In this document: positions 8,157 to 26,835 of the stretch, piece after piece | Layout of the letters: each line of letters starts with the position of its first letter | How positions within the stretch are numbered: position 1 is the first letter of the stretch | NCBI RefSeq assembly: GCF_006345805.1 | Contig: NC_043022.1 | Location: 19,654,001-19,718,000, forward strand | Direction of reading: 5' to 3' | Origin: Octopus sinensis | Taxonomy: Eukaryota | Length of the DNA stretch: 64,000 nt | Position numbers and translations under genes: made by a program | Notes under the pieces: model-generated | Database searches by the model: none | What the model was told of the DNA's origin: nothing | The model's input: only the letters and a program-made list of their open reading frames with translations

Positions 8157-8277
8157 CTAACAGCTTTTTATATCGTCATTCATATTGTTCCACCTTGCAC
8201 GAAGAGTGTTTTCTGTCTCTTTTGGGCAGTATTTCAGATTTTCCGTTACACATTCTTCATCTGATCCAAATATTCTC
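8157..8277 (-). CDS. Terminal coding exon of the secreted six-cysteine protein
   Basis: Acceptor tttatttacttgtttttag|G; phase-2 entry matches the previous exon. Reads RIFGSDEECVTENLKYCPKETENTLRARWNNMNDDIKSC-TAG. Confidence 0.8.
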
Positions 8278-8391
8278 CTAAAAACAAGTAAATAAACATG
8301 AAATCTATAAAGTTGGCAATGTTGTATTGTTATAATGTTATAGGGAATAAAAAGAAGAAAAACATGCAAAAGTTTAACATTCATTTCCATA

Positions 8392-8795
8392 GGCGCAGGA
8401 GTGGCTGTGTGGTAAGTAGCTTGCTAACCAACCACATGGTTCCGGGTTCAGTCCCACTGCGTGGCATCTTGGACAAGTGTCTTCTGCTATAGCCCCGGGC
8501 CGACCAATGCCTTGTGAGTGGATTTGGTAGACGGAAACTGAAAGAAGCCTGTCGTATATATGTATATATATGTATATATGTATGTGTATGTGTGTTTGTG
8601 TTTGTCCCCCTAGCATTGCTTGACAACCGATGCTGGTGTGTTTACGTCCCCGTCACTTAGCGGTACAGCAAAAGAGACCGATAGAATAAGTACTGGGCTT
8701 ACAAAGAATAAGTTCCGGGGTCGATTTGCTCGACTAAAGGCGGTGCTCCAGCATGGCCGCAGTCAAATGACTGAAACAAGTAAAAGCGTAAAAGC
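8392..8795 (+). mobile_element. SINE family A
   Basis: Full copy, just upstream of the terminal exon acceptor. Confidence 0.9.
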
Positions 8796-11087
8796 GTATT
8801 CATATTCCGATATCTCGAATGAAATGCTTTACTAATGTGGGTGGTCCCAACTGAGGAACACCTTGGGCTAGTGTCTTCTACTATAGCTTTGAGCCAGCCT
8901 TGTCAGAGGATTTAGTAGACAGAAACTGAAAGAAGCCTATCATCATCATCATTTAACATCTGTTTTACATGCTGGCATGGGTTGGATAGCTTGATAAAAT
9001 TTGGCCAGCTGAAGGGCTGTTCAGGCTCCATGTCTGTTTTGGCATGGTTTCTGTGGCTGCTGCTGCTGCTGCTGTTGTTGTTGTTGTTGTTGTTGTTAAG
9101 CAACAAGACGGGTAAGGGTGATTAGGTGATGGTCTAGGGATTAGGGGCAGGAGACCCCCAGACCTTGAAAAAAAAAAAAAAAAACTTTGGTCATCTTGTT
9201 GTAGTCGAGGACTCTTCGTTGACGCCCAACACCACTGGGAGGTGGCCCTCGAAGTCGCTGGAAATGGAGATCTCCAGGTCCAAATTCTCAGCCGGCTGCT
9301 GCTGCTGCTGCTGCTGGTGTGATGGTGGCAGTAGTGGTGATAGTTGGCAATGTTCAGGCTCCATGTCTGTTTTGGCATGGTTTCTGTGGCTGCTGCTGCT
9401 GCTGTTGTTGTTGTTGTTGTTGTTAAGCAACAAGACCGGTAAGACAGGTCCAAATTCTTAGCCGGCTGCTGCTGCTGCTGCTGCTGCTGGTGTGGTGGTG
9501 GCAGTAGTGGTGATAGTTGGCAATTGTGGTGGTGGTCACTGAATTTAGTTTTATTTTGATTGTTTTATTTTAGTTTCTACAAGTCAATACAACAAGGTTG
9601 ATGTATTGAGGCAAAATATAGAATTAGAAAAGGGGGATTGCAATCAGAATTCCACTACAAAATATTTTAGTTCAATGCTTTCCAGATTTTGCCACCACAA
9701 ATCCACCCCACCAACCAGTCCACAGTGATGGTACCATGATAAAACCCTAACCCTAGTAAACTCTGCCCCTCTGCCCCAATCTTCTGCTACTTAATTTCCT
9801 CCACCTTTTTTTTTATCCTTTTTGTTACCGTGATCAGGTAGTTATGATTGATTGATTGATTCTGGTTTCAGCTCATGAGCTGTGGCCATGCTGGGGCACC
9901 GCCATTTGTTATGTGGGTTTTTTCTTGATAATCTGATCTTTTATACATTTTGGGGGGTTTTTTTCTCATTTTTCAATGGTTTTTCTTTTTCATCTTTTTC
10001 TTCTTTTGATATTAAATTAGATAAAAAGAAAAAACTGTAAAATGGTTTGGCGAATGAGTAGAAAAAAATGTAGGGCCAACAGAACCCAACCTTTTCTGGT
10101 CTCAGTGCTTATGATAAAATGGTCCCAGTATGTTCCATACAATACTTGCTGAAAGGAAGGGCATCCATCAGTAAACAACAACATGAAAGTGAACAAACAA
10201 TACCTAATCATCCAACCTATTTTAGGGGACCATAAACAGCACTGGATTAACCATTAAGCAAAATAAGAACATGCTTTAGGGCTTCAAGAGATGGAGGCAC
10301 CACAGAGATGAAAATGGTTTATGGCACAAAAGAAATCATTTTAAATTTGCTAAATTAATATTTGTAATGCTTTTATCTCTACTAAGTATAGAAGCAGAAG
10401 TTTTACGTAAAATTAATTTGAACAATTGCAGCGTCGAAGGTGTTTATAAGCCATTTAAGAAACACACAAAAAAACCATTAGATTCACTTCGACATTTAAA
10501 TTTAATTTGTCAAAATATTTTCGTCGCTTTGAGACCACAACCTGTTCACTGACAAATGTAATACTTATTTGTTCAGATGGTTTTGAATATTCATCATCGT
10601 CATTTACATCCTCATCTTCATCCTTGTATTATGTTTACTTTCCATGCTGCATCTCTCGTTATGCAAGTACATCTCCGTAATTTTAACAATATCATGAAAA
10701 ACTTTGCAATTAAATTTTAAAAAAAAACAAAGAAGAAAATATTTCAAATATAAATAAAGTGGAAGTATACAAAAATAAACATTATTTTCCATTTTATTGT
10801 TAGTTTTGTTTCATTTTGGAAAATAAAAATGTATTTTATGGTTTATTATTGTTTACATTTTAGATTTTGAACCATTTACATATAACTTGAGGGCACCAAA
10901 ACTTTTTAAGTGCTTAGGGCCTCTATGGGTCTGGATCCAGCCCTGACTGTACCAATGATTAAGAACTAACTTGGACAGTTATGACAATGCCAAGCCATGA
11001 TTTCACATCTGGCTGCTATGCCAAGATGGAAAGTAAACATAATACAAGGATGAAGATGAGGATGTAAATGACGATAATGAATACTCT

Positions 11088-11483
11088 CTCTCTTTTACTC
11101 TTTTACTTGTTTCAGTCATTTGACTGCGGCCATGCTGGAGCACCGCCTTTAGTCGAGCAAATCGACCCCGGGACTTATTCTTTGTAAGCCCAGTACTTAT
11201 TCTATCGGTCTCTTTTGCCGAACCGCTAAGCATCGGTTGTCAAGCAATGCTAGGGGGACAAACACAGACACACAGACACAAACACACATACACATACATA
11301 CATATATATATACATATATACGACAGGCTTCTTTCAGTTTCTGTCTACCAAATCCACTCACAAGGCATTGGTCGGCCCGGGACTATAGCAGAAGACACTT
11401 GCCCAAGATGCCACACAGCGGGACTGAACCCGGAACCATGTGGTTGGTTAGCAAGCTACTTACCACACAGCCACTCCTGCGCC
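11088..11483 (-). mobile_element. SINE family A
   Basis: Near-full copy. Confidence 0.9.
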
Positions 11484-11768
11484 TAAGTACAAAAATTAAG
11501 TTAAAAATTTAACATTTAAACTGGCCATATCATGTTTTATATTCGAACCAACCAGATCCAGAATATCACACCTACCCTACAATAAAATTCTAAAAATAAC
11601 AATCGCATCATCGAAATCTCGAAACTACAACTTAATAATTATTTCAACACGACATGAATAAATAAGCATAACCTTTGACAGAGTAATCAGAATGCTAAAG
11701 GGTTAAACCAGCCATATCCAGCTCAAATATTCTGCTGGTTTTTATGTCCAAATTGACCAGATCAAATA

Positions 11769-24815: not shown

Positions 24816-24906
<91 letters not shown>

Positions 24907-25530
24907 GTGTGTCTGTGTTTGTCCCCCTAGCATTGCTTGACAACCGATGCTGGTGTGTTTATGTCCCCGTCACTTAACGGTTCGGCAAAAGAGACCGATA
25001 GAATAAGTACTGGGCTTACAAAGAATAAGTCCTGGGGGTTGATTTGCTCGACTAAAGGCGGTGCTCCAGCATGGCCGCAGTTAACTGACTGAAACAAGTA
25101 AAAGAGTAAAAGAGTAAACCCAATCTGTTTCTTAAAGGAGGGACATATTCATTATGCACAGAATGTTATTTACCTAAACGGACGTCAGCGATTGGTTAAA
25201 ATTGCCGAAATACTCGAAATCAAAGACTAAATATCTTACAACCTATAGAATTTTCTCAATAAAGCCAAGAGAAAATGATGTTTTATAAACACATTCTACC
25301 AGTATACGAAGTTTAAAACTTTTTAGTTACCTAGAAATTAAGTTACAAAGTGCCGTTCAAAAGGAAAAGATCCCCAGTTTGTAAATAAAAATAATTTATT
25401 TACTTAGTTTAAAAAATTATTTACTTTGTTCGAAAAATATTATTTAATTTTCTTTGGTATGTATTCAGCCTTGAAATACAAACATACGCGCAAGTCGTTG
25501 TAGGATCGACTACTTACGACTAGCTAGCTA

Positions 25531-25728
25531 TTTTTCTTTACTACCCACAAGGGGATAAACACAGAGAGGACAAACAAGAACAGACAAACGGATTAAGTCG
25601 ATTATATCGACTCCGAAAGGATAAAAGGCAAAGTCGACCTCGGCGGAATTTGAACTCAGAATGTAACAGCAGGCGAAATACGACTACGCATTTCACCCGA
25701 CGTGCTAACGTTTCTGCCAGCTCGCCGC
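25531..25728 (-). mobile_element. SINE family C (MetaSINE-like)
   Basis: Core GCCTTTCATCCTTTCGGGGTCGATAA resembles, from memory, the published Meta domain. Confidence 0.7.
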
Positions 25729-26759
25729 CTAGCGCGGATGCGCGAGTGCGCGCAGCGGGACCCCTGTTCATAGAAGTACCATAGGCAAAGTTTCATGCGA
25801 AACATCGCCGTACCATAAAATATACTATAAAGCAGTATTTACATCAATTTCTTTAGTTTTCGATAAATCACAGGCTGGTTCATAAAATATTAGTTACACT
25901 CTACGCATGGAATCTCATACTGCGTATAAAAATTCTAATGTGCTGCTTTACGTCTAAAATACACATGTACAACCGTAATTTAGTTTTAATGAATCTCAGT
26001 AATTTAAGTACATGACGTCATAAGTGGGTGACTGTGTTTCATCTACCCTTGAGGGACATCTTTCGCATTAAGATCACGCAGTGAAAGTTAGATAATTGGC
26101 ATTAAACTTCAATGAAATAAAAGTTTAATTTATTTGTGAAATGACGAAAAGATCGAACTGATTTATTCTGAAAGATTCCAGTGATTTGTTACGGAATAAA
26201 AACTGATTTATCCGAATATGAAAGATATTTAGTTTGGGGAACATTTTAATGTGCAGGAATACAACAATCAGATTAAAATGTTTATTTAATACTTTTAAAC
26301 AAAGACTTAATCGTTTCATTTACACAGCAGAACACGACTGTTTTTGTATATTCCCGGTTTTTGTTTTGTGTGGTGCGTGTGTTTATGTGTTCTTTTCGCA
26401 AAGTCGAAATTTGCGCTGCTTAAAACATACAGAAGCGAAGAAATTGCGGTTTTTTTGGCACATGAATATAATTTTGGTTAAATTCCGACTCTATAATTTA
26501 GGGTTACCAAATATGTAACTACGCATCTAAAGGAAACCGTCGAAATAGTAGCACCTGCTCGATAAACAAATAAAAGTTGGGCGGTGAAAAAATGTTTTAG
26601 CAGACTTTGTGGTTAATGCTTGTATTATTTTATTCTTTTACAGATCCCAGTCATATGAGTACGGCCATGCTGGAGGTACAAACGGAACAAGGACTGTCAA
26701 ACGCAGTTGATAGTTAGATAGGTAGACAGACAGACAGATATGTGTATAAATGTATTTAC

Positions 26760-26835
26760 CTTCTTCTTCTCCATGAACCGAAGTCACTGCCACATAACAG
26801 AAGAGCAAGCTGGAGATTACGAGAAGGACCTTCAT
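26760..26835 (-). CDS. Coding exon 1 (signal peptide) of a small secreted six-cysteine protein
   Basis: ATG at 26835 gives MKVLLVISSLLFCYVAVTSVHG-EEE (Lys, hydrophobic core, small-residue cleavage site). Ends GAAG|GTAAAT, a phase-1 donor. Upstream acceptor ttccaccacag| at 26855. Confidence 0.75.

What the first reader, a model, noticed from the sequence alone, without database searches (positions are those of the whole stretch)
8157..26835. Hidden three-exon gene for a small secreted six-cysteine protein, missed by the ORF track
Seen: three short unique-sequence exons with canonical splice sites and matching phases (1 to 1, 2 to 2) join to give MKVLLVISSLLFCYVAVTSVHG-EEEDHSKCTKSKVCINSIQTRYDKYRTDHLNGEVEAEGCESRIFGSDEECVTENLKYCPKETENTLRARWNNMNDDIKSC (102 aa). 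The mature chain has C-x5-C-x24-C-x10-C-x7-C-x21-C, with the last residue Cys. Inference: a three-disulfide, probably helical secreted domain, loosely like DUF19/CPG4-type domains. I do not recognise a named family; a lineage-specific ligand, pheromone, venom-gland or skin/sucker protein is possible but untested.
Basis: partly seen in the sequence, partly recalled or inferred. Interest (0 to 1): 0.8.

Follow-up and report, generated by a model that had tools for sequence, protein, structure and literature searches.

The report
Fast-evolving octopus GPI-anchored six-cysteine protein
The exons are real, but they belong to an already annotated four-exon octopus gene (LOC115224795) whose small helical six-cysteine protein is probably tethered to the cell surface by a lipid (GPI) anchor, is found only in octopods, and has an exposed part that changes about three times faster than the neighbouring introns.

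Summary
The gene is not hidden and not complete, though. It is RefSeq LOC115224795 of Octopus sinensis (XP_029651576.1, 127 aa). A fourth exon (window 2595-2516) adds DFGTRITFSFSLLLLALFVNAAEIF.

This four-exon layout, the six cysteines, a [D/N]-F-G motif and the terminal hydrophobic tail are all conserved in O. vulgaris, O. bimaculoides and Argonauta hians. That fits a GPI-anchor signal (omega = D103), so the protein is probably not freely secreted.

No other relatives turned up among 1.84 billion representative proteins, and there is no paralogue in the genome. There is no Pfam hit; DUF19 was tested and not matched. There is no sequence match to PDB chains. AlphaFold gives a confident helical bundle (pLDDT 89.6) with no Foldseek match in PDB.

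Between O. sinensis and O. bimaculoides, the two exons coding the mature domain differ at 25-30% of bases. Adjacent introns differ at 8-10% (p ~1e-10). Second codon positions differ at 30%, and 23 of 37 replacements change charge. The signal and tail exons are conserved. This indicates diversifying selection on a surface protein. Its function and expression are unknown.

The parts
26891..26897 (-). TATA-like box (TATAAAA), about 60 nt upstream of the ATG; probable core promoter of exon 1
   Evidence: Read directly. GATATAAA / GATATATA occurs at the same place in O. bimaculoides and O. vulgaris. That it acts as a promoter is inferred.
26760..26835 (-). Coding exon 1: ATG plus signal peptide MKVLLVISSLLFCYVAVTSVHG, then EEE; ends in phase 1, donor GTAAAT
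   Evidence: Identical apart from 1 nt in O. vulgaris. In O. bimaculoides the aligned part differs at 6 of 69 nt (8.7%, K 0.09), plus a 6-nt length difference (70 v 76 nt). Hydrophobic core Kyte-Doolittle score 2.9.
13918..14029 (-). Coding exon 2: first half of the mature domain (Cys1-Cys3, long helix 1); phase 1 in, phase 2 out
   Evidence: Best match of the Argonauta protein in this genome. 28-34 of 109-112 nt differ from O. bimaculoides, against 7.5-8.5% in the adjacent intron.
8162..8277 (-). Coding exon 3: second half of the mature domain (Cys4, Cys5, first base of the Cys6 codon); ends in phase 1, donor GTTAGT
   Evidence: 29 of 116 nt differ from O. bimaculoides, against 8.4-9.2% in the adjacent intron.
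8157..8161 (-). First 5 nt of intron 3 (GT TAG).
   Evidence: The donor position is conserved in O. vulgaris (GTTAGT), O. bimaculoides (GTAAGT) and Argonauta (GTTTGT). The read-through stop is not conserved in Argonauta.
2516..2595 (-). Coding exon 4: completes Cys102 (T|GT), then DFGTRITFSFSLLLLALFVNAAEIF and TGA; candidate GPI-attachment signal (omega D103, omega+2 G105)
   Evidence: 5 of 80 nt differ from O. bimaculoides. [D/N]-F-G plus a 21-24-residue tail with a hydrophobic core (Kyte-Doolittle 2.5-2.7) is present in all four species.
2383..2388 (-). ATTAAA, candidate polyadenylation signal 128 nt after the stop codon; a second one lies at 2330-2325
   Evidence: This is a motif match only, in an AT-rich genome.
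35256..35330 (-). Possible alternative 5' exon (MAISKNYNPNLLVNVVYVTMEKVRR, donor GTAAAA), used by the deposited O. vulgaris model and joined to a CAG inside exon 1
   Evidence: 96% identical to the O. vulgaris N-terminus of CAI9741141.1. Whether it is real or an annotation artefact was not tested.

Best explanation
This is the single-copy Octopus sinensis gene LOC115224795. It has four coding exons spread over 24.3 kb on the minus strand and encodes a 127-aa precursor.

Shown here: the precursor has an N-terminal signal peptide; a domain of about 80 residues with six invariant cysteines, predicted with high confidence to be a bundle of one long helix, two short helices and a second long helix; and a C-terminal segment [D/N]-F-G + 6-8 polar/mixed residues + a hydrophobic run that ends the protein. 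All these parts and all three intron positions are conserved from Octopus to Argonauta.

Inferred: the precursor enters the ER and the signal peptide is removed (after Ser19 or Gly22). Three disulfides staple the bundle. GPI transamidase cuts after D103 and attaches a GPI anchor, so an 81-residue helical domain sits on the outer face of the plasma membrane, from which a phospholipase could release it.

Shown here: the exposed domain is under diversifying selection. Its two exons have diverged about 3-fold faster than the flanking introns, mostly through charge-changing replacements (net charge -7 in O. sinensis, +6 in O. bimaculoides). The signal and anchor exons are conserved more strongly than the introns.

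Inferred: the domain takes part in an extracellular protein-protein contact whose partner also changes quickly. Candidates are species- or self-recognition, reproduction, or interaction with a pathogen or symbiont. Which one cannot be decided without expression data.
For: Gene model: the 100% match to XP_029651576.1 (127 aa) and its orthologues; exon 4 located with AG acceptor and a T|GT split Cys codon; the same four exons and phases in O. bimaculoides, O. vulgaris and Argonauta.

GPI signal: omega D/N, omega+2 G, 21-24 residues after omega, hydrophobic core Kyte-Doolittle 2.5-2.7, and no charged cytoplasmic residues after it, in four species. The tail exon is the most conserved part of the gene (K 0.065 against intron 0.106).

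Fold: AlphaFold2 pLDDT 89.6/pTM 0.78 (O. sinensis) and 88.1/0.73 (Argonauta), with the same four helices.

Orphan status: only Octopus and Argonauta hits in a full HMMER scan of 1.84e9 representatives and in three word-index searches; no paralogue in the genome.

Selection: exons 2+3 differ at 63/228 sites against intron 668/6761, Fisher p=1.2e-13. Against their immediate flanks (34/401), p=4.5e-10. Nonsynonymous sites 54/195 against intron, p=5e-12. Codon positions 1/2/3 differ at 24/30/29%, but 4-fold sites at only 1/11. 37 of 80 residues are replaced, 23 with a change of charge. All six CDS differences between O. sinensis and O. vulgaris are nonsynonymous.
Against: No dedicated GPI or signal-peptide predictor was available; the call rests on rule-of-thumb anatomy. 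A tail-less type I membrane anchor gives the same sequence picture.

No transcript data could be reached, so use of exon 4 in vivo rests on RefSeq models and conservation. No expression or literature data exist for this gene, so the physiological role is a guess.

The conventional dN/dS for the mature domain is 0.98, not above 1. The claim of positive selection rests on introns and 4-fold sites as the neutral yardstick. Intron divergence was measured only on BLAST-alignable blocks, which biases it downward, although the flanks directly adjoining the exons give the same value. Only four sequences support the AlphaFold alignment. The O. sinensis/O. vulgaris comparison alone is not significant (6 of 384 against an intron rate of 1.65%).
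Confidence: 0.7

Rival explanations
1. One reading: a three-exon gene for a freely secreted 102-aa protein that ends with Cys. It would arise if intron 3 is retained, or if the transcript is polyadenylated inside intron 3, either as the only product or as a soluble isoform alongside the anchored one.
For: The frame does stop at TAG immediately after the donor. The O. sinensis and O. vulgaris donor GTTAGT is weaker than the consensus GTAAGT of O. bimaculoides. The first O. bimaculoides annotation made the same call. An AATAAA lies 616 nt into intron 3.
Against: The exact 102-aa sequence is in no source among 15 billion proteins. Exon 4 is conserved better than any intron, and its [D/N]FG + tail survives to Argonauta. 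The read-through stop is not conserved: Argonauta reads on as L-L-H-F-L. The current RefSeq models of both species use exon 4.
Confidence: 0.12
2. The C-terminal hydrophobic stretch is a permanent transmembrane anchor (type I, without a cytoplasmic tail), not a cleaved GPI signal.
For: ITFSFSLLLLALFVNAAEIF is about 20 residues, long enough to span a bilayer. No GPI predictor or experiment was available.
Against: The protein ends inside the hydrophobic run, with no basic stop-transfer residues. A small-residue triplet [D/N]-x-G sits 8-9 residues upstream and is conserved while surrounding residues vary. D103N in O. vulgaris swaps one classical omega residue for another. These are textbook features of GPI signals (established knowledge, not tested here).
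Confidence: 0.15
3. The gene is drifting without function: a decaying or dispensable orphan, whose dN/dS near 1 reflects relaxed constraint and not selection.
For: Nei-Gojobori dN/dS is 0.98 in the mature part. No known domain, no paralogues and no expression data.
Against: Neutral drift cannot exceed the intron rate, yet second codon positions differ at 30% against 8-10% in flanking introns. The frame, all six cysteines, CVTENLKYC-like and DK..D.L motifs and all splice sites are intact in four species, including Argonauta. The signal and tail exons are under purifying selection.
Confidence: 0.05
4. It is a divergent half-sized member of the nematode-type DUF19/CPG4 cysteine-rich domain family, an extracellular matrix-type module, as the UniRef label for the O. 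vulgaris protein suggests.
For: UniRef100_A0AA36FJA4 is named 'DUF19 domain-containing protein'. Both are extracellular cysteine-rich domains.
Against: hmmscan against Pfam-A gives no DUF19 or CPG4 match at E<=10 for any of five family members, including the O. vulgaris protein itself. The PF01579 six-frame search of the genome found nothing, though its controls were also silent. From memory, DUF19 has about 12 conserved cysteines over about 130-157 positions; this domain has six in 80.
Confidence: 0.1

Closest known systems
Ly6/uPAR (CD59-like) small GPI-anchored proteins
   Same: The precursor architecture is the same: signal peptide, one small disulfide-rich domain of about 80 residues, and a C-terminal GPI signal on its own exon. 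These proteins are often lineage-expanded and fast-evolving surface or recognition molecules.
   Different: Ly6/uPAR is a three-finger beta fold with 8-10 cysteines. This domain is predicted all-helical with six. There is no UPAR_LY6 Pfam hit. It works like them in topology only and is not a member.
Saposin-like proteins (SAPLIP)
   Same: Small helical bundles stapled by three disulfides from six cysteines.
   Different: From memory, the saposin spacing is roughly symmetric, with close Cys pairs at both ends. Here it is C-x5-C-x24-C-x10-C-x7-C-x21-C. No SapB Pfam hit and no saposin among the Foldseek PDB matches. Saposins are not GPI-anchored.
DUF19 (PF01579) / CPG4 (PF15481) nematode cysteine-rich domains
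   Same: Extracellular cysteine-rich domains of unknown function. A source's automatic name for the O. vulgaris orthologue says DUF19.
   Different: No HMM match. Half the size and half the cysteines.
Fungal CFEM and plant LTPG proteins (helical, cysteine-stapled, GPI-anchored)
   Same: Helical disulfide-stapled small domain followed by a GPI signal; cell-surface display.
   Different: They have eight cysteines, come from other kingdoms and are ligand (haem or lipid) binders. No sequence or fold match here. This is an analogy from memory only.
Accelerated-evolution genes such as conotoxin precursors and snake-venom PLA2
   Same: Conserved signal region and introns, but mature-peptide exons that diverge faster than the introns, with an invariant cysteine framework (pattern known from the literature; here).
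   Different: Those are secreted venom components from multigene families. This is a single-copy gene with a membrane-anchor signal, and there is no evidence of venom-gland expression.

Membership tests
GPI-anchored protein (class) | Cleavable N-terminal signal peptide | tested here: met
   Basic residue at position 2 (Lys2), 10-residue hydrophobic core with Kyte-Doolittle 2.9, small residues at -3/-1 (V-x-S19 or V-H-G22); conserved in four species. Judged by rule; no SignalP available.
GPI-anchored protein (class) | C-terminal signal: small omega and omega+2 residues, polar spacer, and a hydrophobic tail that ends the protein | tested here: met
   D/N103-F-G105, spacer TRITFS, hydrophobic core Kyte-Doolittle 2.5-2.7, 21-24 residues after omega, nothing after the hydrophobic run; conserved from Octopus to Argonauta.
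GPI-anchored protein (class) | Release by PI-PLC, or a chemically identified anchor | not testable with these tools
   Needs an experiment.
DUF19 (Pfam PF01579) | Match to the family HMM at or above 23.2 bits | tested here: not met
   No match at E<=10 for P0001-P0005 or the 102-aa form. The six-frame genome search was empty, but its controls were silent too.
DUF19 (Pfam PF01579) | About 12 conserved cysteines over about 130-157 positions (from memory of the Pfam description; model length 157) | tested here: not met
   Six cysteines in an 80-residue domain.
Ly6/uPAR three-finger domain | Beta-rich three-finger fold with 8-10 cysteines; Pfam UPAR_LY6 match | tested here: not met
   Predicted all-helical; no Pfam hit.
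Saposin-like (SapB) | Pfam SapB_1/SapB_2 match, or fold match to saposin structures | tested here: not met
   No Pfam hit. Foldseek against PDB: best E 1.6 and 6.0, no saposins listed.
GDNF/GAS1 helical cysteine-rich domain | Pfam PF02351 match, or fold match to GFRalpha/GAS1 structures | tested here: not met
   No Pfam hit; not among the Foldseek PDB matches.

The most novel reading that the evidence does not exclude
This would be an octopod-born orphan gene encoding a new disulfide-stapled helical fold, displayed on the cell surface by a GPI anchor, whose surface is being rewritten by strong diversifying selection. It would act as a species- or self-recognition tag: for example a gamete-recognition molecule, or the still-unidentified skin cue that stops octopus suckers from grasping the animal's own arms. 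A phospholipase-released form could serve as a contact chemosignal.
Probability: 0.06. Interest if true: 0.8.

Novelty: new member of a known kind. Interest (0 to 1): 0.35.

Why it matters
As a gene discovery it does not matter, because RefSeq already lists the locus as an uncharacterised protein.

The checks add three things. First, they correct the product: GPI-anchored, 127-aa precursor, four exons. Second, they show the family is restricted to octopods and has no recognisable fold relative among solved structures. Third, the mature-domain exons evolve about three times faster than their own introns, while the targeting signals stay fixed.

That pattern marks proteins caught in recognition or conflict. 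It makes this a concrete, cheap-to-test candidate for people looking for cephalopod-specific surface or recognition molecules. It also flags two faulty public models: the old O. bimaculoides 101-aa form and the O. vulgaris 144-aa N-terminus.

Tried and rejected
- **Pfam.** Scans of six sequence versions gave only sub-threshold noise (GeBP-like_C, GPR15L, DUF4736; E 0.1-0.2).
- **DUF19.** A PF01579 six-frame search of the genome was empty, but its controls were silent too, so it is uninformative.
- **PDB by sequence.** A profile search gave only chloramphenicol acetyltransferase at E 0.69.
- **Foldseek.** Two models against PDB and one against BFVD gave only generic helical matches at E>=1.6.
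- **Full HMMER scan.** Besides Octopus and Argonauta, it returned three bacterial repeat proteins at E 1e-4 to 1e-3 that match only 29-36 residues. I rejected these as spurious.
- **Paralogue hunt in the own genome.** Queries with the O. sinensis and Argonauta proteins found only the gene itself. Candidate L015 is a cysteine-free retroelement frame.
- **P450 neighbour as a yardstick.** The O. bimaculoides P450 neighbour could not be used, because L010 is N-masked there and tblastx against 20 kb of O. sinensis flank found only repeats.
- **Global MAFFT alignment of +-300 nt around the exons.** It overstated flank divergence because of indels. I replaced it with BLAST-HSP partitioning (then 53, 58).
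- **Literature and supplements.** Searches for the gene identifiers and for expression data found nothing.
- **Isoform X2 (one Glu fewer).** No GT-AG pair in the window produces it.

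
Full report
**1. The observation**

On the minus strand, the three stretches 26835-26760, 14029-13918 and 8277-8157 are flanked by canonical sites: GTAAAT...TTACAG/GTAAGT...TTTTAG. The cysteine spacing is as stated, with Cys at 30, 36, 61, 72, 80 and 102. So the letters are right.

**2. Whose gene it is**

The window is contig 26, 19,654,001-19,718,000, of a 2.72-Gb assembly. The 102-aa query matches 100% over its full length to XP_029651576.1, 'uncharacterized protein LOC115224795 isoform X1 [Octopus sinensis]', 127 aa. 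A second isoform, X2, has 126 aa.

Orthologues exist in O. vulgaris (CAI9741141.1, 144 aa) and O. bimaculoides (XP_052832927.1, 125 aa). An older O. bimaculoides model, XP_014776917.1, has 101 aa. The gene is therefore annotated, though uncharacterised. The exact 102-aa sequence occurs in no source.

**3. The missing exon**

The public proteins continue after Cys102 with DFGTRITFSFSLLLLALFVNAAEIF. This is encoded at window 2595-2516, behind a polypyrimidine tract and an AG.

- Exon 3 really ends at 8162, on the T of the Cys codon.
- The GT of that 'TGT' is the donor (GTTAGT), and exon 4 starts with GT, which restores TGT.

The old O. bimaculoides model made the same read-through: TGT AAG TAA gives ...SCK.

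The four-exon layout, with phases 1, 2, 1 and the split Cys codon, is the same in three other genomes:

| Species | Locus | Exon coordinates |
|---|---|---|
| O. bimaculoides | L010 | 10001-10070, 16827-16938, 20593-20708, 26338-26417 |
| O. vulgaris | L018 | 10026-10101, 24589-24700, 30146-30261, 35062-35141 |
| Argonauta hians | L011 | four exons as tblastn blocks starting at 10001, 22574, 24408 and 26361; same intron positions |

In O. vulgaris the canonical exon 1 is intact. The deposited 144-aa N-terminus therefore comes from an upstream exon joined to a CAG inside exon 1. That upstream exon also exists in the window at 35330-35256; whether it is really used is open.

A TATA-like box about 60 nt upstream of the ATG is shared by the three Octopus species. 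ATTAAA motifs follow the exon-4 stop codon.

**4. Family and distribution**

- A profile of the mature domain, scanned by HMMER over 1.84 billion representative proteins, found only O. bimaculoides and one Argonauta hians protein (GAB1609545.1, 133 aa, E 2.9e-6).
- The three other hits are bacterial repeat proteins that match about 30 residues.
- Argonauta has a second, nearly identical copy (GAB1603787.1). It lies on another contig whose flanks are about 93% identical, so it is either a haplotig or a recent duplicate.
- Three word-index searches added nothing.
- The O. sinensis genome holds no paralogue. The Argonauta protein's best hit in that genome is exon 2 of this gene.

As far as these databases go, the family is confined to Octopoda. 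Small genes are easily missed in annotation, so absence elsewhere is provisional.

**5. Anatomy of the protein**

All members share the following:

- a signal peptide;
- six cysteines (C-x5-C-x24/25-C-x8/10-C-x7-C-x21-C);
- a [D/N]-F-G triplet;
- a spacer of 6-8 residues;
- a hydrophobic run that ends the protein, 21-24 residues after the triplet's first residue.

This is the textbook layout of a GPI-attachment signal, with omega = D103 (N in O. vulgaris and Argonauta) and omega+2 = Gly. There are no basic stop-transfer residues. I take GPI anchoring as the most likely fate, but this is inference: no predictor or experiment was available. There are no N-glycosylation sequons.

**6. Fold and known families**

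AlphaFold2 on the mature domain, with a four-sequence alignment, gives pLDDT 89.6 and pTM 0.78 with helices at 5-30, 39-43, 47-57 and 60-79. The Argonauta orthologue gives the same pattern (pLDDT 88.1).

- Foldseek finds nothing significant in PDB (best E 1.6 and 6.0; generic TetR/COQ9/three-helix matches) or in BFVD (best E 1.8).
- A PDB sequence-profile search is empty.
- Pfam gives no family for any version, and DUF19 and CPG4 do not appear even at E<=10.

This is despite the UniRef label 'DUF19 domain-containing protein' on the O. vulgaris entry. I could not run a profile-profile test or an AlphaFold DB search, so a very remote link remains possible.

**7. Evolution**

The O. sinensis and O. 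bimaculoides loci are colinear.

| Region (O. sinensis v O. bimaculoides) | Differences | Source |
|---|---|---|
| Alignable intron | 668/6761 (9.9%, K 0.106) | |
| Upstream | 10.7% | |
| Downstream | 7.0% | |
| Exon 1 (signal) | 8.7% | |
| Exon 4 (tail) | 6.2% | |
| Exon 2 | 28-34 of 109-112 (26-30%) | |
| Exon 3 | 29 of 116 (25%) | |
| Intron directly adjoining exons 2 and 3 | 7.5-9.2% | |

Exons 2+3 against all intron give Fisher p = 1.2e-13. Against their own flanks the value is 4.5e-10. The jump in divergence coincides with the exon borders. That argues against a regional mutation effect or a long gene-conversion tract.

Within the mature domain, codon positions 1/2/3 differ at 24/30/29%. 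Four-fold sites in otherwise identical codons differ at 1 of 11, about the intron rate. Twenty of the 80 codons carry two or three changes, which is what inflates the Nei-Gojobori dS to 0.35 and pulls dN/dS to 0.98. Measured against introns, dN (0.34) is about three times the neutral rate (p = 5e-12).

Of 37 replacements, 23 change charge, and net charge flips from -7 to +6. Between the sister species O. sinensis and O. vulgaris, all six coding differences are nonsynonymous, though the total (1.6%) equals the intron rate of 1.65%.

I read this as diversifying selection on the exposed surface, with purifying selection on the cysteine scaffold and the targeting signals.

**8. Mechanism and function**

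- Shown: the gene structure, the conserved targeting signals, the helical six-cysteine domain, orphan distribution and accelerated exon evolution.
- Inferred: ER entry, three disulfides, GPI attachment at D103, display on the cell surface, and a role in a rapidly co-evolving extracellular contact (recognition, reproduction or host-microbe interaction).
- No expression or literature data could be found, so the tissue and the partner remain unknown.

**9. Verdict**

It also took an annotated locus for a hidden one. The gene is an ordinary kind of thing (a small GPI-anchored cysteine-rich surface protein) from an uncharacterised, octopod-only family. The notable feature is that its mature-domain exons outrun their introns.

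Noticed in passing
window 35256-35330 (-): A short ORF (MAISKNYNPNLLVNVVYVTMEKVRR, followed by GTAAAA) is 96% identical to the odd N-terminus of the deposited O. vulgaris model CAI9741141.1. That model joins it to a CAG inside exon 1, replacing the start of the signal peptide. It is either an alternative promoter/first exon or an annotation artefact.
   Followed up: partly
window 26760-26769 (-), exon 1 end (GAA)3: RefSeq isoform X2 lacks one Glu of the EEE run. No GT-AG pair in the window yields it: it would need AA-AG, AG-GA or similar. It probably reflects a GAA-repeat length variant in transcript data or a non-consensus splice.
   Followed up: partly
window 44231-45913 (-): Two adjacent frames separated by a stop both match reverse transcriptase RVT_1 (E 1e-12 and 6e-12). 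This is a decayed non-LTR retrotransposon copy upstream of the gene.
   Followed up: partly
window 58627-59304 (+): A 225-aa stop-free frame with a GIY-YIG nuclease domain (E 7e-7, above the Pfam cut-off), as found in Penelope-like retroelements.
   Followed up: no
window 46192-47515, both strands: Several long overlapping stop-free frames on both strands. One has a sub-threshold match to Neur_chan_memb (20.4 bits against a cut-off of 28.1). It is probably a compositional or repeat effect and not a gene.
   Followed up: no
L011 22322-22360 and 22574-22690 (Argonauta hians): The start of exon 2 (SDEDKCGRAKNC) is duplicated about 250 bp upstream of the real exon 2, together with its acceptor context. 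This is a small local duplication inside intron 1.
   Followed up: no
L011 and L012 (Argonauta hians, two contigs): There are two gene copies differing by 2 of 133 residues, on colinear flanks about 93% identical, followed by a long array of tandem repeats (period roughly 165 bp). They are either haplotigs of a very heterozygous genome or a recent segmental duplication.
   Followed up: partly
window 1-40000 v L010: One dispersed repeat family (for example L010 8542-8977 and 27166-27500) recurs at least seven times in the introns and flanks of this gene in both species. O. sinensis intron 1 (12.7 kb) is twice the O. bimaculoides length (6.8 kb), mainly through such insertions.
   Followed up: no
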